DNA from: Haliotis rubra
Taxonomy: Eukaryota
Assembly (NCBI RefSeq): GCF_003918875.1
Contig: NW_025765570.1
Span: 806,001-870,000, forward strand
Direction of reading: 5' to 3'
Length of the DNA stretch: 64,000 nucleotides
Positions 11,242 to 51,660 of the stretch are shown here, in pieces. The first letter of the stretch is position 1, and every line of letters begins with the position of its first letter. Made by a program: the position numbers and the translations under genes. The notes beneath the pieces were generated by a model. The model saw only the letters and a program-made list of their open reading frames with translations, was not told the origin of the DNA and did not search any database.

Positions 11242-11244
<3 letters not shown>

Positions 11245-11276
<32 letters not shown>

Positions 11277-21500: not shown

Positions 21501-21683
21501 TTACTCAGCCGGTGCGACTTTGATGACATTCCCCGATGAATGTGGTCGCTCTCTGGAGACAACCTTGACGATAAGGAGCAGCATCATGTTGCCCAGGAAC
21601 TCCACAACTTCCACAAGAGTAATCACAGAGCAGCCGACAAACAATCCGGCCTGGCCTCCGATGTCCGCCAACAGGTTCTCAAA
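21501..21683 (-). CDS. DEG/ENaC channel, coding exon 13 (TM2: FENLLADIGGQAGLFVGCSVITLVEVVEF...*)
   Basis: ttccag acceptor; DIGGQxGLFxGxS TM2/selectivity filter motif; TAA stop. Confidence 0.95.
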   Translation of the reverse strand, partial: FENLLADIGGQAGLFVGCSVITLVEVVEFLGNMMLLLIVKVVSRERPHSSGNVIKVAPAE

Positions 21684-22990: not shown

Positions 22991-23236
22991 CTGCATCACT
23001 TCGGGCTGTGTTATAACAGCAGTATTGTTCAAGGTGGCGTTAAACACAACTCACTCACCAAATCATCTTGATACGATGACAGGTATGATTCAGTTCACCC
23101 CCAACCACCCGGATATTCTCATTGGTAGTCAGGGCTCACGACAATCAGGAAATAGCAGGGAATTGTATTCCCTGGAATCCCCACAAACGAAATTATCTTT
23201 GAAACATCGTGATGATCCGCATTTTATGTCACTCAC

Positions 23237-23312
23237 AGCGTAAGCCTGGGTCTCTGTGATCTTCTCATACTGGAGGGTCTCGTAGAACACCTGCACCTGC
23301 AGGAGGTTCCTG
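23237..23312 (-). CDS. DEG/ENaC coding exon 12 (SRNLLQVQVFYETLQYEKITETQAYA)
   Basis: NAGNAG acceptor (ttacag/cag), gtgagt donor; conserved 'vxVFyetLxyexitexxaY' strand. Confidence 0.92.
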
Positions 23313-24577: not shown

Positions 24578-24669
24578 ACATGTCGCCTCGGTTAAACAAA
24601 AGGTCCCTGTTCTATTCTTTCATACATCGTCGTTTATAATGCCACCATTCTGACAGTATTTCAGACTAC

Positions 24670-24921
24670 GGGTGTAGGAGCCAGTTGTTGACTGAGGTAG
24701 TACCTGCTACAGGTGTAGAAGCCAGGTGTTAACTGAGGTAGTGCCTGCTACAGGTGTAGAAGCCAGGTGTTAACTGAGGTAGTACCTGCTACAGGTGTAG
24801 AAGCCAGGTGTTAACTGAGGTAGTACCTGCTACAGGTGTAGAAGCCAGGTGTTAACTGAGGTAGTACCTGCTACAGGTGTAGAAGCCAGGTGTTAACTGA
24901 AGTAGTACCTGCTACAGGTGT
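24670..24921. repeat. 41-bp tandem repeat (~6 copies)
   Basis: Unit GCCAGGTGTTAACTGAGGTAGTACCTGCTACAGGTGTAGAA. Confidence 0.9.
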
Positions 24922-24961
24922 AACAACGCTGCCCAGAGTGATGGTATCTGGTATTACAAAC

Positions 24962-25035
24962 CTGATGTTCTCTTTTGTGTTAAGTATCTCCGACAACCGA
25001 TCGGTCCTATTGGATATCAGCCTCTGAAGTTCATC
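24962..25035 (-). CDS. DEG/ENaC coding exon 11 (DELQRLISNRTDRLSEILNTKENI)
   Basis: ttgtag acceptor, AG|gtttgt donor; phases 0 and 2 join exons 10 and 12 in frame. Confidence 0.75.
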
Positions 25036-25238: not shown

Positions 25239-27558
25239 TGCCCCTATTCCACACAGACCACGAATCGCACGAATCGCCATGAATTGACAAATACGAGGAT
25301 TCGTAGTTGAATCGTAATCAGTTCGTGAAGTTCTTAACTAATTCGTAATATAGTCGTAGTCAGTTCTTGCAATTCTTGAGCAATCGGGAATTCGTGGCAA
25401 AAGTTTTGAACTGTTCAAAATTTTGGACAAGAACTCCCGATAAAATAATCGTAGTTAATTCGTAACAAATTCGTTGTGCATTCTTATTCATCGTAATCGA
25501 ATCGTAGGTATCCTTAACTCATTCGTAGATTTCGTCAATTCGTGGCTTGACCACGAATCGGCTACGAATCTGTCACGAATCCCACAAGTACAGGCCGAAA
25601 CAGGTACGAAGCAAGTAAGAACTATCTTAGAATCAGCTACGATTGCCGTCGAATTGGGTATATAAGGAGTTTAATATTGACTTCAGGTCATTAGCTGCTG
25701 ACGATTGTGCCACGTATCCATAATCAGCAAGAATGTACTTAGCTAAGTATTTCTGTCTTTCAGTTTTATACAATACCAATAAAACGGCAGGATAAAAAAA
25801 AAGAAAAAAGTCCAAAGTTTGTTTTGGTTTTCGTTTCCTTTACCACTGCTCGGTCCGAGCAGAAATTTTGACAAATGGATTTGGGCAATGTGAAGATTGA
25901 AAAAAAGCAGAAATTGTAACATGTTGTTCTAGGGAGATGTTGTGCCAGGAGTCAGTAAAGCGGTACAAGCCCTCTTGGGCCTCTTGTTTTAATAAACGGA
26001 ACATTTTATTAGCGCTAACGAACATTAATAAACACTATGAACATAAATAGTAAAACATTTGAACATGAAATATCAACAGTTATCATTCAGTTAACATTCC
26101 CTCCTGCTAGTATTTCTTGCCCTCCAGAAATGTTGTTGTGGTCTTCATCCTCCCGGTCCGCTTCTGCATTTCCAGTGACAGGGAACCTGATCCTCAATAA
26201 GTTGTGGAGGATGACTCCTGCCTCCACCAGTAACCGCACCACATCAGGTCCTTGTTCCAGGGTGCCCAGGAAGCATTTCCATCTGTTGGCCACAATTCCG
26301 AAAGCATTCTCCACCACACGTCTGCCCCTGGATAATCTGTTGTCAAGGCCCCTCCTGCCATATGGTTTTATGAGGAAAGTCCTCAGTGGAAAAGCATCAT
26401 CCCCCAAATTGTAGTAGGGTGTGTCTCCGTCATCATTGGGTAGGGGATTGCTGTCAGGGAAGTTTATGGTGTTGTCATCAATGCACTCTTTCAGTTCTGA
26501 AGCACCAAACAACTGTGCGTCGGATTGGTGACCTTCTCACCTTCACCAGTGTCTATCCAGATAAACTTATAGTCCGCATCCACCAGGGCCAACAGTTGTG
26601 TGGTTTCCTGATGACCATGTACTTGCCATCCAAGACCCCAAGGGCACGAGGAGCTGGGACTGCTGGGCAATGGCCTTCCAGTCCTCCTTGGTCCTTGGCA
26701 GTGGCATGACGTCATCATTCAGCTCCTGTATGATGGCCTGACAGACTTCCTACACAGTCCATACCACTGCGCTGTAGCCACATCGGAAGTCATACTGGAT
26801 GATGTGATACCAGTCTCCTGTAGCCAGGTGTCTGAGGGTCATGGCTAGCTTCATTCCGGCATCAAGGGCTGGTTTCATGTGGGTGTCCCTCCTCCTCCTC
26901 TGGATGACATGAGCAATCCTGTTGAGTAGCTCATCAAACATGTGGGATGGCATTCTCACATAATTGGCATTTTCATCTTCCATCTTCAGCTCCTGCATCA
27001 GTCTGTTGTAGTGACCATACTCTTGCATTCTACCTGGTGTCAGCCACGGTCTAACCCATCACCTGGGTGCTCTATTCTCCTCCTTCGAAGCAGTCTGCTT
27101 CTAGCAATCTGCAGCTGGTGTTGATACTCCAGCTCAAGGGCAAATACTACAGGTGCTCTACGTTGAACATCCGTTTTGGAACTGTTACCCAAACAGGGTC
27201 TACGACCATTTTATACCTATGTCCCACGAATTGTCAAGAATAGTCACGAATTCATTTTTTCGTACCTGATTCGTACGTGCATTCGGCATATTCTTAACTG
27301 ATTCGTAAGTGATTCCTAACCTTCGGGAAGTATTCGTAATAGATTCTTGTAAATCGTAGTGACTTCTTGACAATATTCGTGCGATTCCAGCCGAATCCAC
27401 GAATGTTCGTACCTCTATCGTACCTGTATCGTAACTGAATCACAGTGCGTCCCGAATTGAACCAGAAAATTTGCACAATTCTTCGAATCCGCTTGAATCC
27501 TCAAATTTATCAATACGTGACGATTCCTGGGATTCGTGGTCTGTGTGGAATAGGGGCA
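25239..27558 (-). mobile_element. PIF/Harbinger DNA transposon with decayed HARBI1-type (DDE_Tnp_4) transposase
   Basis: TIR TGCCCCTATTCCACACAGACCACGAATC at both ends; flanks TAT/TAA; transposase pieces LAMTLRHLATGD, LVDADYKFIWID, GDDAFPL, RRVVENAFG in different frames; GAATC-rich subterminal repeats. Confidence 0.9.
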
Positions 27559-27601: not shown

Positions 27602-27659
27602 CCGACTGGCAAATGACGGAAAGTCAGCAGTAGATATAGTTTGCTGGTATATATTCAAT
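27602..27659 (-). CDS. DEG/ENaC coding exon 10 (LNIYQQTISTADFPSFASR)
   Basis: tttcag acceptor, gtaaca donor; matches the 'Y...S...wPS' motif; phase consistent. Confidence 0.85.
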
Positions 27660-28358: not shown

Positions 28359-28431
28359 TCGCATGGCGGTGGGCAGTCACATTTGTCGCCATCCCTGGCA
28401 TAGTTGTGGTACACGTCGTTGATGCACTTAT
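28359..28431 (-). CDS. DEG/ENaC coding exon 9 (KCINDVYHNYARDGDKCDCPPPCE)
   Basis: tatcag acceptor, gtaagt donor; CxCPxPC thumb motif. Confidence 0.92.
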
Positions 28432-28447: not shown

Positions 28448-28970
28448 TAGTCACATTTCTCATAAAGACACATGGTATAAGCATTTCTCACAAACACACA
28501 ATGTATTCGCATTTATCATAAAAACACATATTATTCGCATTTCTCATAAAGACACATTGTATTCGCATTTCTCATAAAGACACTGTATTCGCATTTTTCA
28601 TAAGATTCATTGTATTCGCATTTTTCATAGACATGTTATTCGCATTCTCAGAAAGACATATTGTATTCGCATTCTCATAAAGACACATAGTATTCGCATT
28701 CTCATGAAGACACATTGTATTCGCATTTTTTCATAAAGACACATGTTATTCGCATTCTCATAATGACACATTGTATTCGCATTCTCATAAAGACATTGTA
28801 TTCGCATTTTTCATAAGACACATGTTATTCGCATTTGTCAGAAGACACATTGTATTCGCATTTCTTCTAAGACATGCTATTCGCATTTCTCATAAGACAC
28901 ATTGTATTCGCATTTCTCACAAAGACACATTGTATTCGCATTTCTCATAAAGACACATTGTATTCGCACA
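28448..28970. repeat. ~28-bp tandem repeat (ATTCGCATTTCTCATAAAGACACATTGT)
   Basis: Tandem periodicity starting just inside the intron next to the exon-9 acceptor. Confidence 0.9.
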
Positions 28971-29850: not shown

Positions 29851-29973
29851 AATGCAGACACTGGAATAGACTGACATCGTATACAGATGGCCAGCCACAG
29901 TCGGAATAGGTGAAGCTGGCAAGGATCGCAATGTAATCAGAGTAATCGGAAAAGTTTCATCGGTACAACTCAC

Positions 29974-30088
29974 AGTCCTGGTCGTTGTCACATGGCCGAC
30001 CGTCGTAAGCATCTGCGTTTGAAAACCGGGTGTCGGTACAGTTGCAGCCTTTCACAATAGAAGTCTGGAGACACGTCTTCCGACATCC
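29974..30088 (-). CDS. DEG/ENaC coding exon 8 (GCRKTCLQTSIVKGCNCTD...PCDNDQD)
   Basis: ctacag acceptor, gtgagt donor; CxxxCxQxxxxxxCxC thumb motif. Confidence 0.92.
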
Positions 30089-30150
30089 CTGTAGAACAAT
30101 AACCATAGCACAGGAACTTTACCAAACCATCCGTTATTATCTTGATACCT

Positions 30151-32283: not shown

Positions 32284-32367
32284 CTCAACAGAGTACTTCC
32301 CCTTGTAAGCGATCTTCCCTCCACGGACACAGTTACTGTATGGCTCACCTTTCTTCTTCACCACTTT
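32284..32367 (-). CDS. DEG/ENaC coding exon 7 (KVVKKKGEPYSNCVRGGKIAYKGKYSVE)
   Basis: atttag acceptor, gtaagt donor; PYSNC and YS motifs. Confidence 0.9.
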
Positions 32368-36450: not shown

Positions 36451-36729
36451 TCGGCAATAAATAATCTGGACATAGCATGGCGTTCAGAGTTTCATTACAT
36501 TCGGACCTTCTTTCCACATATCTCTTAACACAGTGATGAAACAGAATAAAAAATAAAAGATTGCGGTTTTAATTATTAGGGAGCAAACCGAAAGTTGAAG
36601 CTTTGAACGTAAGTGAACCCATGAGCACCCGCTGACATACCCAAGGCCGATAAGAATGAATTGTGTTATTGATGGAATAACAGCTTACAACGAGATGCAA
36701 TGAAATGAATTCCAAAACTTTCAGCTCAC

Positions 36730-36893
36730 CAATCGCAGCCCTACGGATGTGACCTTTCCCGGGGCAAGGTCAATCCCGTTGTCTTCCGGAAATGGAAACT
36801 GGAACGGGTCATGGATTGTCAGCCTTGCTCCAGCTGTTCTGGACAGAGACCCTATGTATTCGTCCTGCTCAATCACCAGCTCCAAACTCAACC
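36730..36893 (-). CDS. DEG/ENaC coding exon 6 (GLSLELVIEQDEY...GARLTIHDPFQFPFPEDNGIDLAPGKVTSVGLRL)
   Basis: ttgtag acceptor, gtgagc donor; GLxLxLxxEQxEY, GxxxxIH and PG..T motifs. Confidence 0.95.
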
Positions 36894-37379
36894 CTACAAA
36901 CAAAACAAACGGCTCTGATTTGTGCTAAACATAGGAAGTGAAGCAATTCGTAACGTAGAAGTTGGATGATTCCGCATGACTGGACACATCCGATTGTGAT
37001 AGATCAGAGGTTTGAAACTGAAAGATGCCTCCTTTTGTGTTATTGAGAATGGGCATATTGTGATTAAAAATTACCACAACTATCAATTAAACATTGAAAT
37101 ACCACTGCTTGTAATTTTACAGTGACACGCTTTGCTTTAATGGCAGTTTGTTTGATGGTAATTCATTCGTCCATGTCGAGCACTCATTATCTTCAGAAAC
37201 ATGTCATGGTAGAATGCATACAGGTCCTTTGTTAGGCAGAGCCACATATGTATCACATGCATAAATGACGAGATGGATATATGTGTCAGATATCGGGCGA
37301 ATGGAGGTGGAGGTAGATTTAACGAGAGAGATATGGCGCATGATAGGACTGTGATATACAGCAGTCACAACGGGTATTA

Positions 37380-40300
37380 ACATATTTGGTGGGGACAAAG
37401 TTCTATAACACTGAGTTGGGACAAAGTTCTGTAACTCGGTTGGGACAAAGCTCTATAACATTGGGCTTGAGAAAGGGCTGTAACATGGGGTTGAGACAAG
37501 GTTCTGTAACACTGGGTTGGGACAAAGTTCTGTAACACATGGTTAGGACAAAGGGCTGTAACACTGAGTTGGAACAGTTCTGTAACACAGGGCTGGACAA
37601 AGTGCTGTAACTATGGGTTCGACAAAGATCTGTAACACTGGGTTTGGACAAGGTTCTGCAACACTGGGTTGGGACAAAGTTCTGCAACACTGGGTTGGGA
37701 CAAAGTTCTGCAACACGCGGTCGGGACAAAGTTCTGCAACACGGGGTTGGGACAAAGTTCTGCAACACGGGGTTGGGACAAAGTTCTGCAAAATACGGGG
37801 TTGGGACAAAGGGCTGTAACACGGGGTTGGGACAAAGATTTTTGACACGGGTTTTGGACAAAGGACTGTAACACGGGGGTTGTGACAAGGTTCTGTAACA
37901 TGGGGTTGGGACGAAGTTCTGTAACACGGGGTTGGGACAAAGGGCTGTAACACGGGGTTGGGACAAAGTTTTTTGACACGGGTTTTGGACAAAGGACTGT
38001 AACACGGGGGTTGTGACAAGGTTCTGTAACATGGGGTTGGGACAAGATTCTGTAACACGAGGTTTGGACAAAGGACTGTAACACGGGGTTTGGACAAGGT
38101 TCTGTAACATGGGGTTGGGACGAAGTTCTGTAACACGGGGTTGGGACAAAGGGCTGTAACACGAGGTTGGGACAAAGGACTGTAACACTGGGTTGGGACA
38201 TAAGGGCTGTAACCCGGGGTTGGGACAAGGTTCTGTAACAATGAGCTGGACAAAGTTCTGTAACACGGGGTTGGACAAAGTTCTGTAACATGGGGTTGGG
38301 ACAAGGTTCTGTAACACGGGGTTGGGACAAAGGGTTGAAACACAGGGTTGGGACAAAGTTCTGTAACACGGGGTTGGGACAAGGTTCTGTAACATGGGGT
38401 TGGGACGAAGTTCTGTAACACGTGGTTGGGACATAGTTTATGTGACACGTAGTTGGGACGAAGTTCTGTAACACAGGTTTGGGACAAAGTTCTGTAACAC
38501 GGGGTTGGGACAAAGGGTTGAAACACGGGGTTGGGACAAAGGGTTGTACCATGGGGTTGGGACAAAGGGCTGTAACTTGGGGTTCGGACAAAGATCTGTA
38601 ACACTTGGTTGGGACAAAGTTCTGTAACACTGGGTTGTGACAAGGTTCTGCAACACGGGGTTGGGACAAAGGGCTGTAACACGGGGTTGGGACAAAGTTC
38701 TGTAACATTGGTTTGGGACAAAGTTCTGCAACACGGGGTTGGGACAAAGGGCTGTAACACGGGGTTGGGACAAAGTTCTGTAACATTGGTTTGGGACAAA
38801 GTTCTGCAACACGGGGTTGGGACAAAGGGCTGTAACACGGGGTTGGGACAAAGGGCTGTGACAAAGGGCTGTAACACTGGGTTGGGACAAAGTACTGTAA
38901 CATTGGTTTGGGATAAAGTTCTGCAACACGGGGTTGGGACAAAGGGTTAAAACACGGGGTTGGGACAAAGTTCTGTGACACGGGGTTGGGACAAATTTGT
39001 GTGACATGGGGTTGGGACAAATGAATGTAACACGGGGTTGGACAAAGTTCTGTGACACGGGGTTGGGACAAAGGACTGTAACACGGGGTTGGGACAAGGT
39101 TCTGTAACATGGGGTTGGGACGAAGTTCTGCAACACGGGGTTGGGACATAGTTCTGTGACACGTAGTTGGGACGAAGTTCTGTAACACGGGGTTGGGACA
39201 AGGTTCTATGACACAGGGTTGGGACAAAGGACAGTAACATGGGGTTGGGACAAAGCTCTGTAACACGGGGTTGGGACAAAGGAGTGTAACACGGGGTTAG
39301 GGACAAGGTTCTGTAACACGGGGTTGGGACAAAGGGTTGAAACACGGGGTTGGGACAAAGGGTTGTACCATGGGGTTGGGACAAAGGGCTGTAACTTTGG
39401 GTTCGGACAAAGATCTGTAACACTCGGTTGGGACAAAGTTCTGTAACACTGGGTTGTGACAAGGTTCTGCAACACGGGGTTGGGACAAAGGGCTGTAACA
39501 CGGGGTTGGGACAAAGGGCTTTCACACTGGGTTGGGACAAGGTTCTGTAACACGGGGTTGGGACAAAGGGTTAAAACACGGGGTTGGGACAAAGTTCTGT
39601 GACACGGGGTTGGGACAAAGTTGTGTGACATGGGGTTGGGACAAATGAATGTAACACGGGGTTGGACAAAGTTCTGTGACACGTAGTTGGGACGAAGTTC
39701 TGTAACACGGGGTTGGGACAAGGTTCTATGACACAGGGTTGGGACAAAGGACAGTAACATGGGGTTGGGACAAAGCTCTGTGACACGGGGTTGGGACAAA
39801 GGAGTGTAACACGGGGTTAGGGACAAGGTTCTGTAACATGGGGTTGGGACGAAGTTCTGTAACACGTGGTTGGGACATAGTTCTGTGACACGTAGTTTGG
39901 ACAAAGTTCTGTAACACAGGGTTGGACAAAGTACTGTAACACGGGTTTGGGACAAGGTTCTGTAACACGGGGTTGGGACAAAGGGTTGAAACACGGGGTT
40001 GGGACAAAGGACTGTAATATGGGGTTGGGACAAAGGACTGTAACATGGGGTTTGGACACAGATCTGTAACACTCGGTTGGGACAAAGTTCTGTAACACGG
40101 GGTTGTGACAAGGTTCTGTAACACTGTACTGGGACAAAGTTCTGCAACACGGGGTTGTGACAAGGTTCTGCAACATTGGTTTGGGACAAAGTTCTGCAAC
40201 ACGGGGTTGGGACAAAGGGCTGTAACACGGGGTTGGGACAAAGGGCTGTAACACGGGGTTTGGACAAGGTTCTGTAACAATGGGTTCGACAAAGTTTTGT

Positions 40301-43300
40301 AACATTGGGTTGGACAAAGGGCTGTAACACTGGGTTTGGACAAAGTTCTGTAACACGGGGCAGGGACAAAGGGTTAAAACACGGGCTTGGGACAAAGTTC
40401 TCTGACACGGGGTTGGGACAAAGGAGTGTAACACGGGGTTAGGGACAAGGTTCTGTAACATGGGGTTGGGACGAAGTTCTGTAACACGTGGTTGGGACAT
40501 AGTTCTGTGACACGTAGTTTGGTACAAAGTTCTGTAACACAGGGTTGGACAAAGTACTGTAACACGGGGTTGGGACAAGGTTCTGTAACACGGGGTTGGG
40601 ACAAAGGGTTGAAACACGGGGTTGGGACAAAGGACTGTAATATGGGGTTGGGACAAAGGACTGTAACATGGGGTTTGGACAAAGATCTGTAACACTCGGT
40701 TGGGACAAAGTTCTGTAACACGGGGTTGTGACAAGGTTCTGTAACACTGTACTGGGACAAAGTTCTGCAACACGGGGTTGTGACAAGGTTCTGCAACATT
40801 GGTTTGGGACAAAGTTCTGCAACACGGGGTTGGGACAAAGGGCTGTAACACGGGGTTGGGACAAAGGGCTGTAACACGGGGTTTGGACAAGGTTCTGTAA
40901 CAATGGGTTCGACAAAGTTTTGTAACATTGGGTTGGACAAAGGGCTGTAACACTGGGTTTGGACAAAGTTCTGTAACACGGGGCAGGGACAAAGGGTTAA
41001 AACACGGGGTTGGGACAAAGTTCTCTGACACGGGGTTGGGACAAACTGGTGACATGGGGTTGGGACAAATGAATGTAACACAGGGTTGGACAAAGTTCTG
41101 TGACACGGGGTTGGGACAAAGGACTGTAACACGGGGTTGAGACAAGGTTCTATGACACAGGGTTGGGACAAAGGACAGTAACATGGGGTTGGGACAAAGC
41201 TCTGTGACACGGGGTTGGGACAAAGGAGTGTAACACGGGGTTGGGACAAGGTTCTGTAACATGGGGTTGGGACGAAGTTCTGTAACACGTGGTTGGGACA
41301 TAGTTCTATGACACGTAGTTGGGACGAAGTTCTGTAAGACGGGGTTGGGACGAAGTTCTGTAACACGGGGTTGGGACAAGGTCTGTAACACAGGGTTGGG
41401 ACAAAGGACAACAGGGGTTGGGACAAAGGGTTGAAACACGGGGTTGGGACAAAGGACTGTAACATGGGGTTGGGACAAAGGGCTGTAACTTGGGGTTTGG
41501 ACAAAGATCTGTAACACTCGGTTTCGACAAATTTCTGTAACACTGGGTTGTGACAAGGTTCTATATCACTGTACTGGGACAAAGTTCTGCAACACGGGGT
41601 TGTGACAAGGTTCTGTAACACGGGGTTGGGACAAAGGGTTGAAACACGGGGTTGGGACAAAGGACTGTAACATGGGGTTTGGACAAAGGGCTGTAACTTG
41701 GGGTTTGGACAAAGATCTGTAACACTCGGTTTCGACAAATTTCTGTGGGTTGTGACAAGGTTCTGTGACAAGGTTGGGACAAAGTATGCAACACCGGGTT
41801 GGGACAAAGTTCTGCAACACGGGGTTGGGACAAGGTTCTGTAACATTGGTTTGGGACAAAGTTCTGCAACACTGGGTTGGGCAAAGGGCTGTAACACGGG
41901 GTTGGGACGAAGGGCTGTAACACGGGGTTGGGACGAAGGGCTGTAACACGGGGTTGGGACAAGGTTCTGTAACTATGGGTTGGACATAGTTCTGTAACAC
42001 AGGGTTGGACAAAGGTCCATGACACCGGGTTGGGACAAAGGACTGTAACACGGGGTTGGGACAAGGTTCTGTAACATGGGGTTGGGACGAAGTTCTGTAA
42101 CACGGGGTTGGGACAAAGGGTTGAAACACGGGGTTGGGACAAAGGACTGTAACACAGGGGTTGGGACAAAGGGCTGTAATTTGGGGTTCGGACAAAGATC
42201 TGTAGCACTCGGTTGGGACAAAGTTCTGTGACACGGGGTTGGGACAAGGTTCTGCAACATTGGTTTGGGACAAGGTTCTGCAACACGGGGTTGGGACAAA
42301 GGGCTGTAACACAGGTTTGGGACAAAGGGCTGTAACACGGGTTGGGACAAGGTTCTGTAACAATGGGTTGGACAAAGTTCTGTAACATTGGGTTGGACAA
42401 AGGGCTGTAACACTGGGTTGGGACAAGGTTCTGTAACACGGGGTTGGGACAAAGGGTTAAAACACGGGGTTGGGACAAAGTTCTGTGACACGGGGTTGGG
42501 ACAAAGGACTGTAACACGGGGTTGGGACAAGGTTCTGTAACACGGGGTTGGGACAAAGGTTTGAAACGCGGGGTTGGGACAAAGGGCTGTAACATGCGGT
42601 TGGGACATAAGGGCTGTAACACGTAGTTGGGACGAAGTTCTGTAACACGGGGTTGGGACAAGGTTTCTCTTAACACTGGGTTGGGACAAGGTTCTGTAAC
42701 ACGGGATTGGGACAAAGGGTTAAAACACGGGGTTGGGACAAAGTTCTGTGACACGGGGTTGGGACAAATGAATGTAACACGAGGTCGGACAAAGTTCTTT
42801 GACGCGGGGTTGGGACAAAGGACTGTAACACGGGGTTGGGACAAGGTTCCGTAACATGGGTTGGGACGAAGTTCTGTGACACGTAGTTGGGACGAAGTTC
42901 TGTAACACGGGGTTGGGACAAGGTTCTGTAACACGGGGTTGGGACAAAGGTTTGAAACGCGGGGTTGGGACAAAGGGCTGTAACATGCGGTTGGGACATA
43001 AGGGCTGTAACATGGGGTTCGGACAAAGATCTGTATCACTCGGTTGGGACAAAGTTCTGTAACACTGGGTTGTGACAAGGTTCTGTAAGACTGGATTGGG
43101 ACAAAGTTCTGCAACACGGGGTTGGGACAAGGTTTTGCATAATTGGTTTGGGACAAAGTTCTGCAACACGGGGTTGGGACAAAGGGCTGTAACACAGGGT
43201 TGGGACAAAGGGCTGTAACACTCGGTTGGGACAAGGTTCTGTAACAATGGGTTGGACAAAATTCTGTAACACGGGGTTGGACAAAGTTCTGTAACACGGG

Positions 43301-43380
43301 GTTGGGACAAAGAGCTTTAATATGGAGTGGGAGTAAAGTTCTGCAATATGGGGTTGAGAAAATGGGCTGGGACAAAGATG
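37380..43380. repeat. ~26-bp G-rich satellite (CTGTAACACGGGGTTGGGACAAAGTT), about 230 units, with higher-order blocks; intronic
   Basis: 6-kb tandem array; variant-unit order recurs (e.g. 39801 vs 40423). Confidence 0.95.
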
Positions 43381-43500
43381 TGTGACAGTGGACTGTGATC
43401 GGCCGCTGACAAACGGCTGCTTCAAGTGTCTCGGGACTGTGACATAGGGGCTTCTGTTTAGTTTCTCTTTGCTATAATACCCCGTCATATAGTCGCTTAC

Positions 43501-43604
43501 CATACAAAGGTCCTGACTTGTACGAGCGTATTCCCTTGGCCGTCTTGAAACCATTGAATGTGTAACAGTTCCCGTATAAATTATTGTAGAACATCGTGAA
43601 GTTC
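43501..43604 (-). CDS. DEG/ENaC coding exon 5 (NFTMFYNNLYGNCYTFNGF...KSGPLYG)
   Basis: tgccag acceptor, G|gtaagc donor; YGNCYTFN signature. Confidence 0.95.
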
Positions 43605-43963
43605 CTGGCAAACACAAAACAACATGTTGCTACTTGCTGTTGTCCCAGCATTGTTGTTATTCACGATAGCTGAAAGACGTTTTATACTTCATTCAATTTA
43701 AGGTGAGCATCTTTCAACATGTATCGTCAGTGTTACGAACAATAACTATGGTAATGTGTACAACCACATGTAAACATGGAACCGTTCCATATGTAAACGT
43801 TCAAGCATTGAACCAAGCTGGATTTGGGTTTGTATGGATATTGAGTTCTTGTTTCCTGGACTTTTTTTTCTATCGCAGGAACAATGAAGCCAAACCTTTG
43901 CAAAAAGCAAATCATCTCAGCAACAGGGGCTCTTGAAATTTAGATCAATTGTATTCTACTCAC

Positions 43964-44163
43964 TTGGCGCCGCAGGTTTCTCCGTTGATGGAGCACGACT
44001 GCAGCATCTCACGGAGTTGGTGGCCCATGGTGAGTCTGGTGCTGATGTTCATCTTGACGAGGGCCATGCTGATCTGATGAGCGGCCACGGACTGCCCCGT
44101 CTCCTTCCCTTCCTCCAGCCATGGCAGTTCTGGTGAGTCATAGAAGGACCCCACGTTCCTCCT
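43964..44163 (-). CDS. DEG/ENaC coding exon 4 (RRNVGSF...MGHQLREMLQSCSINGETCGA)
   Basis: gtgcag acceptor, gtgagt donor; GHqLxxMLxxCxxxGxxC motif. Confidence 0.92.
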
Positions 44164-44227
44164 CTGCACAAACATACACACATGGAGTAAAAACACTGCA
44201 AGAAGGAGCAAGAGTGTGACTCACTTG

Positions 44228-44630
44228 GAGGGGGTCTGCGGGGAGGGATCACGATGGAGGGTTGTGTGGGGGTTAAAGGGGAGGAGTCACGATGGAGGGT
44301 TGTGTGGGGGTTAACGGAGAGCAGGCACGATGGGGGATGTATGTGGGGATGAAACGGCTTGAGTCACGATGGAGGGTTGTGTGTGGGTTAACGGGAGGAG
44401 TCACGATGGAGGGTGTCTGTCCGGATGAAACGGGGTGAGTCACGATGGAGGATGTCTGTGGGGATGAAACGGGGTGAGTCACGATGGACGGTGTCTGTCG
44501 GGATGAAACGGGGTGAGTCACGATGGAGGATGTCTGTGGGGATGAAACGGGGAGGAGTCACGATGGAGGGGGTCTATGGGGTTAACGGAGAGCAGGCACG
44601 ATGTAGGGGGTCTGTGGGGATGAAAGAGGT
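44228..44630. repeat. ~39-bp G-rich tandem repeat (GAGTCACGATGGAGGATGTCTGTGGGGATGAAACGGGGT)
   Basis: Tandem periodicity. Confidence 0.85.
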
Positions 44631-44712
44631 GGATTTCACTCTACGGCTACCCTTACATCCGTCTCCCAGGACCCGGTGAACTACGCTTGCCGGTTATAAA
44701 GTGCCAGCTTAC

Positions 44713-44772
44713 CGAGAAGCTATATAGCCTGTTCACATAGTGCGTACTGACACCGGTTCCATTACATGGCGC
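44713..44772 (-). CDS. DEG/ENaC candidate coding exon 3 (APCNGTGVSTHYVNRLYSFS), symmetric 60-nt exon
   Basis: tgccag acceptor, gtaagc donor, phase 0-0 and open; no homology support, and skipping it also keeps frame. Confidence 0.55.
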
Positions 44773-45414
44773 CTGGCAATTTGTAACAGAAAAAACATAT
44801 TTCAAAGAATTTTGGGTTTGACGAGACAGGGGACACGTTCTACCAACTGGGTCTATGTGAATTGTATCAGTGGGCAGAGGCAATAAAGTGTGGGACAGTA
44901 ACAACACGTCAATCCTGACAACCTGATCCACTGGGACACACACTGATCCGCACGAACCATGTGAGGGTGTGTGTGAGTAAACTAAATGTATACAGCCCAA
45001 ACAATTACATGATATTGACCAGAGTATATATACAGCGTTGATTACATTGATGTGGCTGAGTGTTCAGCGGAGTGATACCATGAAAGAGAGATCCCTCTAG
45101 AGTATATATGTGATGCAGTGCACTTGTTGCAGAGTTGAGGTGATTTTGTAATAATATGTTGTGTAGGTAATACATACAAAATGGTGAAGCGTGTTCCGGG
45201 TACTTCGATGTTGTGGTTGCTTTAATGGAAAGTGTAACTGAATTTGGAAACTTCAAAACAGAAAGTCGCCCATTTACGACATATCAATGTCAGTCATTCG
45301 CTCTCAGTTGTTTTAACTGGGGTTTTTTTTAGCGATGGTTGATTTGTGCAGTCAGAGAAGGACTTCAGTTCAAGAAACTTTGTGCTTGCTTGGGCTGCAG
45401 TACATGCTGACTAA

Positions 45415-46065
45415 TCCCCAGAAGCTACATAGGGATCCCTAGAAGCTACAGAGGAATTCCTAGAAGCTACAGAAGGGATCCCTAGAAGCTACAGAGGAAT
45501 TCCTAGAAACTACAGAGGAATCCCTAGAAGCTACAGAGGAATTCCTAGAAACTACAGAAGGAATCCCTAGAAGCTACAGAGGAATTCCTAAAAACTACAG
45601 AGGAATCCCTAGAATCTACAGAGGGATTCCTGGAAGCTACAGAGGAATTCCTAGAAGCAACAGAGGAATTCCTAGAAGCAACAGAGGGATTCCTAGCAGC
45701 TGCTGAAGGATCCCTAGAAGTTCAAGAGGGATTCCATGTAGCTGCTGAATAATCATTACAAACTACAGAGGGATCCCTAGCAGCTGCAGAAGGCTTCCAA
45801 GTAGCTGCTGAAGGATCCCTAGAAGTTCCAGAGGGATTCCATGTTGCTGCTGAATAATCATTACAAACTACAGAGGGATCCCTAGTAGCTGCTGAATAAT
45901 CCCTAGAAGCTACAGAGGAATTCATAGAAGTTGCAGAGGGATTCCTAGAAGCTACAGAGGAATTCATAGAAGTTGCAGAGGGATTCCAAGTAGCTCCTTA
46001 GGGATTCCTAATAGCTGCTGAAGGATCCCTAGTAGCTGCTGTCATATCCCTAGTCCCTGCTGCTT
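45415..46065. repeat. ~21-bp minisatellite (CTAGAAGCTACAGAGGAATTC), intronic
   Basis: Tandem periodicity with indels. Confidence 0.88.
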
Positions 46066-46307
46066 AAGGGTCCCATGGAAACCAAAAATTAAAACACAAC
46101 TCCAACAGGCCAAGCTGCAATGTTTACTAAGCCTGACACGTTGATAATCGTTGGCGAGTCTGGTCTACACAAGTATATATGTGCTGATTTGTACTTAGTG
46201 TTTATTTCATATTTGAGTATTTTAGATCACTTAAGTAATACGTTACATAGGAAGCAACGTAAAATAATTGATCGTACTGCTTGTATTACAATCCGAATGA
46301 TACTCAC

Positions 46308-46922
46308 GTCATAGGGGTCGTTAGTTTGTTGGTCGCCGCTGTAGTCGCCGCTGTAGTCACCGCTGTAGTCGTAATAATTCCCACTGCCGCTCCCACTATA
46401 GTCATTGTAACCACTTCCACTACCGGATCCACTGCCGCTTCCACTTCCGGAACCACTGCCACTGTCACTGCCACTTCCGCTACCGGAACCACTGCCGCTG
46501 CCATCACCACTGCCACTTCCACTTCCGGAACCACTACCACTTCCACTTCCGGAACCACTGCCGCTGCCATCGCCACTTCCACTTCCGGAACCACTGCCGC
46601 TACCATCGCCACTTCCACTTCCGGAACCACTGCCGCTGCCATCGCCACTTCCACTTCCGGAACCACTGCCACTTCCACTTCCGGAACCACTGCCGCTGCT
46701 ATCACCACTCCCATATCCGGAACCACTGCCGCTGCCATAACCACTTCCATATCCGGAACCACTGCCGCTTTCGTCTGCATAAATCACGCCATTGTGTAAC
46801 GCTTCCTCCGTTTTATTCACTATGTTCGCCAGGACCGATCCTCCCTCAGAAAGTTTTGATTGTTTTACAATATTCTTGTTGCATATGGTGACAGCAGGAA
46901 ACTCTAAAGGAGCGTGCAGCAC
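46308..46922 (-). CDS. DEG/ENaC coding exon 2 (VLHAPLEFPAVTICNKN... plus long Ser-Gly tract)
   Basis: ttttag acceptor, GAC|gtgagt donor; FPAVTICNxN post-TM1 signature; 615 nt open, phase 0-0. Confidence 0.9.
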
Positions 46923-47879
46923 CTAAAATTTGGGAAGTACTGTTACTTGTTTTTGAAACCGTGCAATTATTGCTGGTGAGAATCAATCATGGTTGAATTG
47001 ATAAATCAAGATATATATGACACATAGTTTGCCTAATCGAATGTCTGCGAAACTCAAGTTTAAACGTTTTTGTTTGTTTGCTGGGTTTCGACCGCTAGAA
47101 TCAAGGATATTACTAGTTAGATAAACTCCAGCAACCATAGTGTGTTGGGTGGTTGTCAGGTTCAGTAACTTGGATTATTGTGTGTGAGAATACCCCGAAG
47201 GAGGGGATCGTTGTTAACAAATATCAATCATTAGATTTTCTGGTCGAGACTCAGTTTACATATACAGGCTGCTGTCAAAAAACGGAAGCGTTTAACAAAC
47301 GAACACACCAAATGAAGCAAAAGCATACATATATGTTTGTAAGAATGATAACTTGATTCAAACGCATCAGTTTGTGATCGTTATATATAGACTGCTGTCG
47401 AGGAAAACGTCTACCGAAATACATTTTGTCTAATTACTCCACACGGTTAAACAAAGAAATAAATTCGTGATGAATGACAAATGAATTCCATTAAGGTGCA
47501 AAGCTGTAACCCAAAAAATGTTGAGACAATGCGTTTGGCATAAAAAAAGTAAGGCCTCATTAAAACAGCTACCGAGAGGGAGAGCTGTTAGTATGATCAT
47601 CGCGGGCGTCACATATGCCCACATGCTGAGAACATTCGGTTTCACCCATGTTTCCATTACGAGGTAGACGCGGCGTTTAAAGCAGAGTGGTCGGTGATGC
47701 CCATTGATTACCAACACGTCCGTGGGTCGCGGCAGCAACGCGAGAACATGGTGCTCAAGCATATGTCAACCAAAGCGTGGAATGACATAAACCCCACTTT
47801 AGAGTGAGTGAGATCAGTAGTCCCTTCAGCAATATTTCAGCCATATCGTGACCAATATAAACCCCACAATACAACAGGG

Positions 47880-48010
47880 TGGACACGGTCGGCAGGTGGG
47901 AGACTTGGGGCGAGTGCTGTTCTCTGATGTGAGCAGGTTTTGATTGTTTATGAGCTGGTCGTCGGGTGCGTGTGCACAGACGTCAACGCGAACGGGGGCG
48001 TTGTCTGGTT
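47880..48010 (+). mobile_element. Short Tc1-like transposase relic (WGRVLFSDVSRF)
   Basis: Resembles the first catalytic-D motif VLFSDESRF. Confidence 0.45.
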
Positions 48011-48264
48011 ATCATTCAAGTTCATCACTTCAAAGATGTGTGTGATGTTTCGTTCTGCTGCCATTTGTCAGTCAATATCCACCTGGAGATACTACTCAGA
48101 TTGCATAAATGTTTAAACATCCAACATGCTTTTGAATCGTCTCTCCTCGTGTACTTCTGATTCGACGTCAGCTGACGTTACCGTAATGCATTCAGGCCAT
48201 ACAGCATGTTCAACGTATTCGTCTTGGTAACGATCTACAGTTTACTAGAAACGACCAAATCCTT

Positions 48265-48528
48265 TCACCATCCATAGTGATCTACCTTCAGTTGTTGGCG
48301 ATCTATATCACGTTTTTTAAATTGTATTGTCTTTCATAGTTAAGATATTTTAGATTTTCATGCTAGTTTTACAATTATATCTGTGATATTCTAGTTATTT
48401 TTACTGTCCTTTGCCGACAGGTTTTTATAATTTACCAAGATTTATTATGACAATATAACTTGTTTTAGTCACGATATGGCTGAAATAGTGCCGATGTGAC
48501 TTAAAATCCTAACTCACTCACTCACTCC
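48265..48528 (+). mobile_element. Interspersed repeat (family D) with (ACTC)n tail
   Basis: Homologous to 60120-60365 (GTGATCTACCTTCAGTTGTTGGCGATCTATA...GTCACGATATGGCTGAAA). Confidence 0.75.
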
Positions 48529-48588
48529 ACATCCATAAGAAATCTCTGCTAAAAACAGTCAATTGTGAGTGTATCATGAGTATATATA

Positions 48589-49057
48589 CTATCCCAAAAA
48601 AGAAACGCATAGGCGTTTTGTATTTTTTAAAAACTATTAATTACCTTTTGTGTTCAAACAATCGTCAAAATATGTAACAAAAGTGTTCATAACATGATTT
48701 TACACAATTGCACAAGTAAAAAACCGACTTTACCTGAACATGTTGTATTTGATAACATTTCTTACAAGGATTAAAAAGGCATCGCCACAAGGCAACCGAA
48801 ATCACCTTCCAATTGAAATTGTGCAGCAAAGAGCATGCACTGTCTGGCTATAAAAATCCAGATTACTTTCGGAAATCGGCATCGCGCTCAGCGTATCCGT
48901 TATCTAAAATTATCCACTTGGTTGTATAGACATTTCCTTCTTCTAAACCGATGTAGAATTCATGTACTGAAGTCTATTTGTGGACGAGCTATACATGTTT
49001 GAAAATACAACATTTTCGCAACAGATTTCTGGCCTATGCGTTTCTTTTTTGGGATAG
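48589..49057. mobile_element. Tc1/mariner-type MITE, 469 bp
   Basis: Perfect TIR CTATCCCAAAAAAGAAACGCATAGGC with TA target duplication. Confidence 0.92.
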
Positions 49058-49059
49058 TA

Positions 49060-49330
49060 TATTTGTTTCAGCAGTATTACAGCTGTACGACGTTGTTTGT
49101 AAACAAAAGGAAATCTCTGGTAAAGGCAGAGTGTACAGTCTGACTATATCATGAGTATGGATATGTTTCAGCAGTATTACAGCTGTACGATGATGTTTGT
49201 AAACAAGTCGAAATCTCCGGTAAAGGCAGAGTGTACAGTCTGACTATATCATGAGTATGGATTTGTTTGACGCCACATTCATCAGTATCACAGCCATCGG
49301 ACGGGGTCTGTAAACAATTGAATCGGAAAA
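49060..49330. repeat. ~99-bp tandem duplication (2-3 units)
   Basis: TGTTTCAGCAGTATTACAGCTGTACG...GGTAAAGGCAGAGTGTACAGTCTGACTATATCATGAGTATGG repeated. Confidence 0.8.
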
Positions 49331-49426
49331 GTCATAAAACAGTTTGAAAGATTTACTGAATCCTTGAATGTTGTAAAGCTTGTTCTAGGAAATCTATACT
49401 GCTGGAAAAGTGGAAACTGCACTTAC

Positions 49427-49630
49427 CTCTATCATTGTGTTGACGGGGTAGGAGTAGTATTTGGTGAACAACGCTCGTATCTGATAGCCACATAGCACAG
49501 CACACGTGAGAAAAACAGCTGTATAGAACACTTTCTTAATGATGTTATTGGATATAGCGATGCGATTGACGCCATGCCCTGACCAGTTGTTCGAAAAGTG
49601 CTTAGCTTCTTCCTTGAAGCTGTCCTTCAT
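49427..49630 (-). CDS. DEG/ENaC coding exon 1 (MKDSFKEEAKHFSNNWSGHGVNRI...TM1...YYSYPVNTMIE)
   Basis: HG pre-TM1 motif, hydrophobic TM1, YxSYPV; gtaagt donor; a tctccag acceptor at ~49666 suggests a further upstream exon. Confidence 0.9.
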
Positions 49631-50361: not shown

Positions 50362-51660
50362 CAGTACAACCAGAAATTATTGAGAATTTAAAGATTGTAT
50401 TTATATTTTTTTTTCATTCATTACTCACGTATTAAATGTGAATATTAGCAGAACATAACTCTAGATTCAAAGACAGGTGAACAGTTAGTATTTTGTCTAG
50501 TCACCATGGGCAGCAATGCAGGAAGCAATGCGGCGGGGCATACTACTGATCAAAGAAGTTAGAAAGTCGTGGCCCATGCTGTCCGAATATCGGACCACCT
50601 CTTCTTTCATTTCAGCAATATTTGTCAGATTTTTCGTATTGACACTTTCCTACATAAGTCCCCAAACATTTTCTGTTGCATTTAGGTCAGGGCTATAGCT
50701 TGGCCAATCTAAGAATGTCATATTTTGGGTCCGAAACCAGGCCTGTGAATGCTTTGAACGATGTTTGGGGTCGCTGTCCTGCTGGAAAATCCAAACATTT
50801 CCATAGAACAAGTGAGCAGATGGAAGTAAATGTCCCTCGAGAATATCTGTGTACCGCTCACTGTTCATATTCCCTTCAAATACACAGAGGGGCGTTGCCC
50901 CTAACACAGATATGCCACCCCACAAGTTAAATTTCGGACTGTACTCTGGGCGCTGATACAAAGGTTTTTCAGTTTGTTTGGTCCAGAATTTCAGTGTATT
51001 AGGAAACAGCCACACAGAACTTTCATCTGAGAAAATCACATTGTCCCAGTTACAATTTCTATGCTGTAAGGACCAGTTCAACCTTCGCTCCTTTTGTTCA
51101 GGTTTCATGATCGGTGATGGAATTCCTCGACTTTTCTGCCAACCCATTGCATGCAGCTCAGTTCCAATTGTCTCCTTACAGACAGCCACAGTTCCTCTAT
51201 CAATCATATCCAGCCTTAAGTTTTCTAAACTCCTTCGTTTGTTTTTTAGAAACATGAATACCAAGCCGCCTCCTGTCACCGACAGTCAATTTTCTGGGCC
51301 TACCTGCGCCTCCCTGGTGCTCAATGCCATATCCATTTGCACTAGTTTTCAAAACACGATAAACAGTGGACATAGGGATGCCTGTTCTACTTGAAATCAC
51401 TTTAGCTGATCTGATGTCCTTGTTATAATACTCTAAAATCAACTTCCTCTTCTCTAAATCATCCATACTGAGGATCAGTGAAAATGTCGTCTGCTAGCAA
51501 GTAAACAAAGGGGGGTAACTCTTCACAAACTAATGAAAAAGGATTAACGGAGTTGTCTCTCTTGAATGAAACCAAGTACTTGATAGCTGGTCAAGGTTGT
51601 TTATACTAGAAATCCAATGAAACATATTCCTAAAATTATCAATAATTTCTGGTCATACTA
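50362..51660 (-). mobile_element. Tc1 (DD34E) transposon, full length, transposase inactivated
   Basis: TIR CAGTACAACCAGAAATTATTGA (imperfect) with TA flanks; GRPRK, VIFSDES, FQQD-x34-E (SPDLNATEN); one frameshift and a premature stop. Confidence 0.92.

What the first reader, a model, noticed from the sequence alone, without database searches (positions are those of the whole stretch)
46320..46780. DEG/ENaC channel with a serglycin-like (Ser-Gly)n ectodomain insert: candidate proteoglycan ion channel
Seen in sequence: coding exon 2 continues in frame from FPAVTICNKN into ~145 aa of ADESGSGSGYGSG...(DGSGSGSGSGSG)n...YNDYSGSGSGNYYDYSGDYSGDYSGD. This holds roughly 50-55 Ser-Gly dipeptides punctuated and flanked by Asp/Tyr, and ends at a phase-compatible GT donor. 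Established: Ser-Gly repeats with acidic neighbours are the xylosyltransferase acceptor for chondroitin/heparan sulfate chains, as in serglycin (...DYSGSGFGSGSGSG...). The insertion site is the variable finger region, where ENaC has its gating GRIP domain and degenerins have extracellular regulatory inserts; matrix or glycan tethering is implicated in DEG/ENaC mechanosensing. Inference: this subunit may carry a dense glycosaminoglycan brush (three per trimer if homomeric) that tethers the pore to matrix or mucus, concentrates cations or binds peptide ligands. I know of no described DEG/ENaC with this domain, but could not search.
Basis: partly seen in the sequence, partly recalled or inferred. 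Interest (0 to 1): 0.9.

Follow-up and report, generated by a model that had tools for sequence, protein, structure and literature searches.

The report
Sodium-channel gene with Ser-Gly insert
An intact, transcribed invertebrate DEG/ENaC sodium-channel gene carries a 149-residue acidic Ser-Gly repeat in its outer "finger" region, which fits the sequence rule for sugar-chain (glycosaminoglycan) attachment, so it may be the first ion channel that is itself a proteoglycan, but this is unproven.

Summary
Minus-strand exon 2 (46922-46308, 615 nt, phase 0/0) runs in frame from FPAVTICNKN into a 149-aa tract (46778-46332). The tract holds only Gly, Ser, Asp, Tyr, two Asn, one Ala and one Glu, with 57 Ser-Gly dipeptides and no basic residue.

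I built a complete 12-exon, 649-aa DEG/ENaC model with all AG/GT sites, the HG motif, 14 ectodomain cysteines and a G-C-S filter.

One 232-nt contig in run X1 joins 46308 directly to 44163. This confirms the predicted donor and shows that at least the last 165 nt of exon 2, about 141 nt of them tract, are in spliced RNA. X1 has depth on exons 2-3 and none on the flanking intron.

At DNA level the tract is a young 36-nt minisatellite, in a gene whose introns are full of minisatellites. It lies between ASC profile positions 97 and about 140. That is the finger, roughly where ENaC has its GRIP domain.

The tract fits the xylosyltransferase acceptor rule, and synthetic GSG linkers are xylosylated in mammalian cells. 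GAG attachment is therefore plausible (about 0.45) but untested. A tolerated, unmodified flexible loop is the main rival.

No orthologue could be retrieved. Verdict: a new variant of a known kind, of moderate to high interest.

The parts
49427..49630 (-). Exon 1: start codon, cytoplasmic N-terminus with HG motif, TM1, up to ...YPVNTMIE, then GTAAGT donor
   Evidence: Pfam ASC profile 1-57, E 1.4e-10; aligns with alpha-ENaC 54-116. The junction to exon 2 was not seen in RNA.
46308..46922 (-). Exon 2 (615 nt, phase 0/0): FPAVTICNKN, start of the finger, then the Ser-Gly tract and ...DQQTNDPYD
   Evidence: Pfam ASC profile 65-97; donor GTGAGT matches 7 of 9 consensus positions, the best phase-0 GT in the exon.
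46332..46778 (-). Ser-Gly tract, 149 aa (model residues 117-265): 57 SG, 12 Asp, 10 Tyr, no basic residue; core is about 10 copies of a 36-nt unit coding GSGSGSGSGDGS
   Evidence: No phase-0 GT lies inside it.
46332..46409 (-). Tyr/Asp-rich end of the tract (YNDYSG...NYYDYSGDYSGDYSGD): SG sites with Asp at -2 to -4; also resembles tyrosine-sulfation sites (inference)
   Evidence: This stretch lies inside the RNA contig.
44094..46472 (-). Span of the spliced contig of run X1: 46472..46308 joined directly to 44163..44094 (intron 46307-44164 removed); the exon 2 part is 6 nt shorter than the window
   Evidence: table 8, record 1 (232 nt; 159 and 70 letters on the two sides). X1 depth is 0 in intron bins 44294-46263 and 46855-47642.
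43964..44163 (-). Exon 3: remainder of the finger, ending in GHQLREMLQSCSINGETC
   Evidence: residues 46-66 align with human ASIC1 170-190; the acceptor is confirmed by the RNA contig.
43501..43604 (-). Exon 4 (NFTMFYNNLYGNCYTFN...)
   Evidence: Pfam ASC profile 162-204.
36730..36893 (-). Exon 5 (GLSLELVIEQDEY...PGKVTSVGLRL)
   Evidence: Pfam ASC 204-260, E 7e-9; beta-ENaC 250-299, E 1e-5.
32284..32367 (-). Exon 6 (...GEPYSNC...KYSVE)
   Evidence: found by motif and phase, not confirmed in RNA.
29974..30088 (-). Exon 7 (GCRKTCLQTSIVKGCNC...)
   Evidence: Pfam ASC 297-335.
28359..28431 (-). Exon 8 (...KCDCPPPC)
   Evidence: phases fit exons 7 and 9.
27602..27659 (-). Exon 9 (LNIYQQTISTADFPSFASR), the Y..S.S.FPS strand segment
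   Evidence: strong polypyrimidine acceptor and correct phase; model only.
24962..25035 (-). Exon 10 (DELQRLISNRTDRLSEILNTKENI), knuckle-like segment
   Evidence: model only; no Pfam hit on its own.
23237..23312 (-). Exon 11 (RNLLQVQVFYETLQYEKITETQAYA)
   Evidence: Pfam ASC 400-429.
21501..21683 (-). Exon 12: FENLLADIGGQAGLFVGCSVITLVE... (pre-TM2, TM2 with G-C-S filter), short C-terminus, stop
   Evidence: Pfam ASC 423-455, E 3e-10; ASIC5 440-469, E 5e-6.

Best explanation
Shown: the window holds an intact, transcribed 12-exon gene for a 649-aa DEG/ENaC subunit. An in-frame 36-nt minisatellite inside exon 2 has produced a 149-aa tract made almost only of Gly, Ser, Asp and Tyr, with net charge about -13. 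The tract sits in the extracellular finger, after the FPAVTICN strand and before the GH..ML..C segment.

Inferred: the tract is disordered and passes through the Golgi lumen. There its 57 Ser-Gly sites (50 of them Gly-Ser-Gly, 18 with Asp or Glu at -4 to -2) are acceptors for peptide O-xylosyltransferase. At least some copies of the subunit would then carry xylose-primed chondroitin or heparan sulfate chains, making it a part-time or full proteoglycan.

Most speculative: these polyanionic chains, at the outer rim of each subunit of the trimer, link the finger (a gating and ligand-binding part of the family) to matrix or mucus, or concentrate cations or basic peptides near it.

My odds: tract is in the mature protein 0.85; any xylose or GAG on it in vivo about 0.45-0.5; GAG with a gating or tether role about 0.2.
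For: Gene and insert: ASC profile hits are collinear over the exons. The full ORF has canonical splice sites, an HG motif, 14 ectodomain Cys and GGQAGLFVGCS.

Transcription and splicing: the X1 contig joins 46308 to 44163 and contains about 141 nt of the tract. X1 has depth on exon 2 bins 46264-46854 and zero in the flanking intron bins. Four samples of the same study hold 9-21% of the exon 2 words. No phase-0 GT lies inside the tract, and the used donor is the best one in the exon.

Topology: the tract lies between TM1 (about residues 30-48) and TM2 (about 601-631).

Acceptor fit: human XT1 needs Ser followed by Gly or Ala, otherwise tolerates many sequences with a preference for acidic residues, and bound a peptide with Tyr at -1 (PMC5992326). 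[quoted passage not shown] Serglycin and aggrecan carry GAGs on consecutive or numerous SG repeats (PMC4859157).

Composition: none of the 27 non-Gly/Ser residues is Arg, Cys, Ala-by-mutation, Val or Thr, although single-base changes of these codons would give Arg 21% and Cys 9% of the time.

A related organism (X21, about 93% identical) holds the exon start plus about 100 nt of the tract.
Against: There is no direct evidence of any glycan.

The repeat units are nearly identical at DNA level, synonymous positions included. The tract is therefore young or homogenised, and its purity may reflect age rather than selection.

The gene's introns hold at least ten minisatellite arrays, so expansion here may be a mutational by-product tolerated in a surface loop.

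Only 18 of 57 sites have an acidic residue at -4 to -2.

XT specificity is known from mammals, not from this animal.

RNA evidence is one low-depth contig (depth 3.9) covering the 3' third of the tract. The exon 1-2 junction and the middle of the tract were not seen in a single molecule.

No orthologue or paralogue with such a tract could be retrieved.
Confidence: 0.45

Rival explanations
1. Tolerated low-complexity loop. Replication slippage expanded a (GGN-AGY)n minisatellite inside exon 2. The resulting flexible Gly/Ser spacer sits on a surface loop of the finger, is not specifically modified, and has little or no effect on the channel.
For: Units are near-identical at DNA level (36-nt unit; TRF). 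In-frame length differences of 6 nt occur between the window, the RNA contig and a DNA contig. Minisatellites are unusually abundant in this locus. The finger is the most variable part of the family; the ASC profile shows no match between positions 97 and about 160. First-stage notes describe other large inserts and Gly/Ser-rich genes in this genome (untested).
Against: GSG motifs exposed in the secretory pathway are xylosylated even in artificial linkers (PMC5240648), so 'unmodified' is unlikely if the animal's enzyme behaves like the mammalian one. The tract has a regular Asp every 12 residues, Tyr/Asp-rich ends, and no basic or hydrophobic residue.
Confidence: 0.33
2. A polyanionic domain without GAG. 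The tract is made strongly acidic by tyrosine sulfation of the D-Y-S-G-D sites, by secretory-pathway Ser phosphorylation, or by short O-glycans. It then binds Ca2+, Na+ or basic peptides near the finger, in the manner of acidic Ser/Asp-rich mollusc matrix proteins.
For: Ten Tyr are present, seven of them with Asp or Glu within two residues, and there is no basic residue. Phosphorylation of a Gly-Ser linker in a secreted protein has been documented (PMC5240648). The tyrosine-sulfation preference for acidic, turn-rich surroundings is established knowledge that I recall and did not test here.
Against: Only the two ends of the tract hold Tyr. The central 100 or so residues are plain GSG with Asp, which is the xylosylation motif. 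There are no data on the modification.
Confidence: 0.12
3. The tract is not part of a working protein. Either the gene is a decaying paralogue, or the productive isoform leaves the tract out.
For: The gene is weakly expressed (depth 3.9 in one contig; no X1 depth on exon 1). Weaker phase-0 GT sites exist upstream of the tract. Exons 6, 8, 9 and 10 rest on my model alone.
Against: The ORF is a complete 649 aa with 11 canonical introns, and all family hallmarks are intact. The spliced contig keeps the tract and uses the donor after it. The length variant is in frame.
Confidence: 0.06

Closest known systems
DEG/ENaC channels (Pfam ASC, PF00858): ENaC, ASIC/BASIC, FaNaC, degenerins
   Same: Same gene family. 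The shared features are two TM segments, the HG motif, FPAVTICN, 14 ectodomain Cys and a G-x-S filter. Single exons align best with beta/alpha-ENaC, ASIC5 and FaNaC structures.
   Different: No solved or, in the searched library, described member has a Ser-Gly repeat in the ectodomain. It cannot be placed in a subfamily here, because different exons prefer different relatives.
ENaC GRIP domain (insert between finger helices alpha1 and alpha2; PMC6197857)
   Same: A subunit-specific insert at about the same place in the finger, at the periphery of the ectodomain, where it can influence gating.
   Different: GRIP is a folded beta-strand domain with a disulfide and protease sites. This tract has no Cys and no basic residue, and is low-complexity. 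It is analogous in position, not homologous.
Serglycin, aggrecan, and glypican/syndecan GAG-attachment regions
   Same: Runs of Ser-Gly with acidic neighbours in a lumenal or extracellular, probably unfolded segment. Serglycin has consecutive SG repeats and aggrecan has about 120 SG in one exon (PMC4859157).
   Different: Those are dedicated core proteins with demonstrated GAG chains. Here the tract lies inside a channel ectodomain and no glycan has been shown. Low complexity precludes any inference of homology.
Synthetic (G4S)n/GSG linkers in secreted fusion proteins
   Same: GSG in a flexible secreted segment, without a dedicated core-protein context, is O-xylosylated and can receive GAG chains (PMC5240648 and references therein; PMC12567180).
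   Different: Those observations come from mammalian production cells, usually at low occupancy. This is a natural tract in an invertebrate with about 50 such motifs plus Asp.
Extracellular tethers of mechanosensitive DEG/ENaCs (ENaC N-glycans with ECM/glycocalyx; PMC6955349)
   Same: A glycan on the channel ectodomain that links it to matrix or glycocalyx is an accepted way to pass force to ENaC.
   Different: The known case uses N-glycans in the palm and knuckle. A channel-borne GAG chain in the finger would be a new form and is untested.

Membership tests
DEG/ENaC (Pfam ASC PF00858) | Sequence match to the ASC profile, collinear along the gene | tested here: met
   The profile segments fall in gene order on seven exon-holding frames: 1-57, 65-97, 162-204, 204-260, 297-335, 400-429 and 423-455. 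Three are above the gathering score on their own (41.3, 35.6 and 40 bits).
DEG/ENaC (Pfam ASC PF00858) | Two transmembrane segments flanking a large Cys-rich ectodomain (seven conserved disulfides) | tested here: met
   Hydropathy peaks at residues 30-48 (1.71) and 601-631 (up to 2.09), with 14 Cys between them. Disulfides 1-7 are conserved across the family (PMC6197857).
DEG/ENaC (Pfam ASC PF00858) | N-terminal HG motif, post-TM1 FPAVTxCN, pre-TM2 GGQxGLF and TM2 G-x-S filter | tested here: met
   SGHGV, FPAVTICN and DIGGQAGLFVGCS are all present in the 649-aa model. TM2 aligns with ASIC5 440-469.
DEG/ENaC (Pfam ASC PF00858) | Forms an amiloride-sensitive trimeric cation channel | not testable with these tools
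   Needs expression and electrophysiology.
Proteoglycan core protein (serglycin-like Ser-Gly GAG-attachment region) | Acceptor Ser followed by Gly/Ala, flanked by Gly, with acidic residues nearby | tested here: met
   57 Ser-Gly and 50 Gly-Ser-Gly; 18 have Asp/Glu at -4 to -2 and 43 have one within +/-6; no basic residue. Rule taken from PMC5992326.
Proteoglycan core protein (serglycin-like Ser-Gly GAG-attachment region) | Tract exposed to the Golgi lumen / extracellular side | tested here: met
   The tract (residues 117-265) lies between TM1 and TM2 in the ectodomain, which also holds the conserved Cys and N-x-S/T sequons. The topology is inferred from the family, not measured.
Proteoglycan core protein (serglycin-like Ser-Gly GAG-attachment region) | Covalently attached xylose-linked GAG chain | not testable with these tools
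   Needs lyase shifts, a xylosyltransferase-deficient host, 35S-sulfate labelling or glycoproteomics.
Proteoglycan core protein (serglycin-like Ser-Gly GAG-attachment region) | Common descent with serglycin or another core protein | not tested
   The PDB search gave only low-complexity matches (SPAG8, GS linkers). Homology cannot be inferred from such sequence, and the DNA shows a local minisatellite origin.
ENaC GRIP domain | Insert between finger helices alpha1 and alpha2 | tested here: inconclusive
   The tract lies between ASC profile position 97 and the GH..ML..C segment, with exon 2 residues 5-44 aligning with gamma-ENaC 91-127 and exon 3 residues 46-66 with ASIC1 170-190 (weak E-values). 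The helices were not located because no full-length structure prediction could be run.
ENaC GRIP domain | Folded beta-strand core with disulfide and protease-cleavable inhibitory tract | tested here: not met
   The tract has no Cys, no basic residue (so no furin-type site) and only 7 residue types.

The most novel reading that the evidence does not exclude
This DEG/ENaC subunit is a true proteoglycan. Several chondroitin or heparan sulfate chains grow from the finger-domain Ser-Gly tract of each subunit. They act as the extracellular tether, or as a polyanionic antenna, that couples matrix or mucus movement, cations or basic neuropeptides to gating. This would be the first ion channel known to carry its own GAG chains.
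Probability: 0.2. Interest if true: 0.85.

Novelty: new variant of a known kind. Interest (0 to 1): 0.55.

Why it matters
How DEG/ENaC channels are coupled to the extracellular matrix is an open question. Tethers are postulated for degenerins, and for ENaC only N-glycans have been implicated (PMC6955349). A natural subunit with about 50 GAG-acceptor motifs in its gating-relevant finger would allow a direct test: express it with and without the tract, and with and without GAG lyases or xylosyltransferase. If it is glycanated, it would add ion channels to the list of proteoglycan core proteins. It would also show how a coding minisatellite can create a new post-translational module in one step. 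If it is not, it is a clean example of how much low-complexity sequence the finger loop tolerates.

Tried and rejected
1. HMMER search of 1.84 billion representatives with the 57 non-repeat residues of exon 2 gave only two spurious bacterial repeat proteins.

2. Word-indexed homologue searches with exon 2 (region 1-60) and with exon 3 found nothing. The length window excludes full-length channels, and the collection seems to hold no fragments of this gene. Retention in orthologues therefore could not be tested by protein search.

3. The spliced 649-aa model has no reference, so I did not pass it to the homologue search, structure prediction or fold search. For that reason there is no AlphaFold placement of the insert.

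4. The ESM Atlas look-up of exon 2 returned only ASC fragments below the reliable score.

5. The PDB search with exon 2 is dominated by low-complexity hits such as SPAG8 and GS linkers. I rejected these as homology.

6. Pfam on ten candidate frames for the missing exons gave nothing. Exons 9 and 10 were found instead by phase, splice-site and motif logic.

7. I first read FPAV at the end of the exon 1 frame as coding. The GTAAGT donor after ...MIE shows that it is intronic.

8. I first suspected that X1-X4 were DNA tags. The spliced contig and the zero intron depth show that X1 holds RNA. X19 and X20 are DNA, because their contigs cross exon-intron borders.

9. Literature searches found no DEG/ENaC with a Ser-Gly or GAG domain. 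This absence holds only for the held library.

Full report
OBSERVATION

On the minus strand, an AG at 46924-46923 opens an exon that runs from 46922 to 46308 (615 nt, 205 codons) and ends at a GTGAGT donor. It reads VLHAPLEFPAVTICNKN, then 37 ordinary residues, then a 149-aa tract (window 46778-46332), then QQTNDPYD.

The tract consists of G64, S59, D12, Y10, N2, A1 and E1. It holds 57 Ser-Gly and 50 Gly-Ser-Gly and has no basic residue.

Tandem Repeats Finder reports a 36-nt unit with 9.8 copies and score 364. All three frames of the coding strand are open across the repeat. An open frame is therefore not evidence on its own. The evidence is frame continuity with conserved segments on both sides, plus RNA.

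THE GENE

Pfam ASC (PF00858) matches minus-strand frames in profile order. These are 49427-49630 (profile 1-57), exon 2 (65-97), 43475-43660 (162-204), 36724-36924 (204-260), 29960-30118 (297-335), 23132-23338 (400-429) and 21504-21725 (423-455).

Using splice sites, phases and family motifs, I assembled 12 exons:
- 49630-49427
- 46922-46308
- 44163-43964
- 43604-43501
- 36893-36730
- 32367-32284
- 30088-29974
- 28431-28359
- 27659-27602
- 25035-24962
- 23312-23237
- 21683-21501

All introns are AG/GT. The CDS is 1950 nt and the protein 649 aa, with no internal stop.

The family hallmarks are present: SGHGV, FPAVTICN, 14 ectodomain cysteines, DIGGQAGLFVGCS with a G-C-S filter, and hydropathy peaks at residues 30-48 and 601-631.

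Single exons align with beta/alpha-ENaC (E 1e-5), ASIC5 (E 5e-6), alpha-ENaC (E 2e-4) and FaNaC structures. The gene is therefore a divergent invertebrate member that I cannot assign to a subfamily. Exons 6 and 8-10 rest on the model only.

TRANSCRIPT EVIDENCE

Run X1 has no library record and was guessed to be RNA. It holds a 232-nt contig. Letters 4-162 of that contig lie on 46472..46308 with no mismatch and a 6-nt gap. Letters 163-232 lie on 44163..44094 (table 8).

This is exactly the predicted donor joined to an AG acceptor at 44165-44164, in frame...DPYD|RRNVGSF.... X1 has depth on bins 46264-46854 and 44097-44293, and none on intron bins 44294-46263 or 46855-47642. So it holds spliced RNA, with tract sequence in it.

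Three further samples of the same study hold 9-19% of the exon 2 words. Runs X19 and X20 are DNA of the same organism. Their contigs cross exon-intron borders and break inside the repeat.

X21 comes from a differently labelled organism. One of its contigs (46677-47334, about 93% identical) reaches about 100 nt into the tract.

Limits of this evidence:
- Depth is low (3.9).
- Exon 1 and the 1-2 junction were not seen.
- No single molecule spans the whole tract.

Inside the tract there is no phase-0 GT. The used donor is the best phase-0 GT of the exon (7 of 9 consensus positions). Weaker ones at 46787, 46820 and 46868 could in principle give a tract-less isoform.

ORIGIN OF THE TRACT

The codons show a DNA-level unit, ggc agt ggt tcc gga agt gga agt ggc GAT ggc agc. 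It is repeated with few changes, synonymous positions included. The tract therefore arose, or is kept homogeneous, by tandem duplication, not by convergence at protein level.

The gene is exceptionally rich in minisatellites. Examples are 37388-43356, 45420-46037, 44245-44625, 28454-28968, 23294-24576 and 24666-24922, with more downstream of the gene at 5416-16118 and 21790-22990.

None of the 27 non-Gly/Ser residues is Arg, Cys, Val or Thr. Random single-base changes of these codons would give Arg 21% and Cys 9%. This hints at a constraint on composition, but the Asp residues are part of the unit, so independent events are few.

POSITION IN THE FOLD

The tract follows the segment that matches ASC profile 65-97. 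Exon 2 residues 5-44 align weakly with gamma-ENaC 91-127. The tract precedes by about 45 residues the motif MGHQLREMLQSCSINGETC, which aligns with human ASIC1 170-190.

This places it in the finger. ENaC's GRIP domain lies between finger helices alpha1 and alpha2, at the periphery of the ectodomain (PMC6197857). The position is therefore analogous.

The content is not. The tract has no Cys, no basic or furin-type site, and seven residue types. I could not run a structure prediction, because the spliced protein has no reference.

INTERPRETATION

Human xylosyltransferase 1 requires the acceptor Ser to be followed by Gly or Ala. It tolerates most other sequences with a preference for acidic residues, and it bound a peptide with Tyr at -1 (PMC5992326).

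GSG in synthetic linkers of secreted proteins is O-xylosylated 'unavoidably', and GAG chains on such linkers have been reported (PMC5240648 and its references). Serglycin and aggrecan carry GAGs on consecutive or numerous SG repeats (PMC4859157).

The tract is lumenal by topology. I therefore take GAG priming on at least some sites as the most likely single reading (about 0.45-0.5). A gating or tether role is a further, weaker inference (about 0.2). That inference draws on the finding that ENaC shear sensing needs matrix plus channel-borne N-glycans (PMC6955349).

Rival readings:
- An unmodified, tolerated flexible loop born of slippage (0.33).
- A polyanion made by Tyr sulfation, phosphorylation or short O-glycans (0.12).
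- A tract that does not reach a working protein (0.06).

COMPARISON AND NOVELTY

The gene is a member of DEG/ENaC, and all tested hallmarks are met. It works like a proteoglycan core only by sequence rule, and the defining feature, a covalent GAG, is untestable here. It is not a GRIP domain.

In the held library no paper combines degenerin/ENaC with a Ser-Gly or GAG-attachment domain. No solved structure has one either. I class it as a new variant of a known kind.

First-stage notes on the same genome mention Ser-Gly micro-exons, heparanases and another DEG/ENaC with a very large insert. These are untested leads. They suggest that Gly/Ser-rich coding repeats and ectodomain inserts are not rare in this animal.

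WHAT FAILED

The representative-library search and two homologue searches were blank. The Atlas gave only ASC fragments. The full-length model could not be submitted to the fold or homology tools. Retention in orthologues, the key evolutionary test, therefore remains open apart from the X21 contig.

VERDICT

Interest is 0.55.

Noticed in passing
window 37388-43356 (intron 4): A 6-kb minisatellite (26-nt unit, about 230 copies) that is stop-free in all three minus-strand frames. It gives spurious ORFs of up to 636 aa directly downstream of exon 4.
   Followed up: partly
window 23294-24576 (intron 10 into exon 11): A 63-nt minisatellite runs up to, and about 18 nt into, exon 11 (start 23312). 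The acceptor and the first bases of the exon are therefore repeated about 20 times upstream as potential decoy acceptors.
   Followed up: no
window 26090-26536, minus strand (intron 9): An ORF with Pfam DDE_Tnp_4 (E 2e-7), a Harbinger/PIF-type transposase remnant, inside the channel gene.
   Followed up: partly
window 50653-51493, minus strand: A Tc1/mariner-type transposase (DDE_3 E 6e-14, HTH_Tnp_Tc3_2) about 1 kb upstream of the channel's start codon.
   Followed up: partly
window 47643-49415 (intron 1): Very high-copy repeats. Summed contig depth is 1e3 to 1e6 in all four runs, with many internal joints, so this is probably a family of short interspersed elements.
   Followed up: no
window 5416-16118 and 21790-22990: Further long minisatellite arrays with units of 16, 33, 21, 40 and 100 nt, covering about 10 kb downstream of the gene. 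Together with the intronic arrays, roughly a third of the window is tandem repeat.
   Followed up: no
window 46308-46472: The tract is 6 nt (2 codons) shorter in the RNA contig of X1. A 6-letter gap also occurs in a DNA contig of X19 relative to the window. This is an in-frame length polymorphism of the coding repeat.
   Followed up: partly
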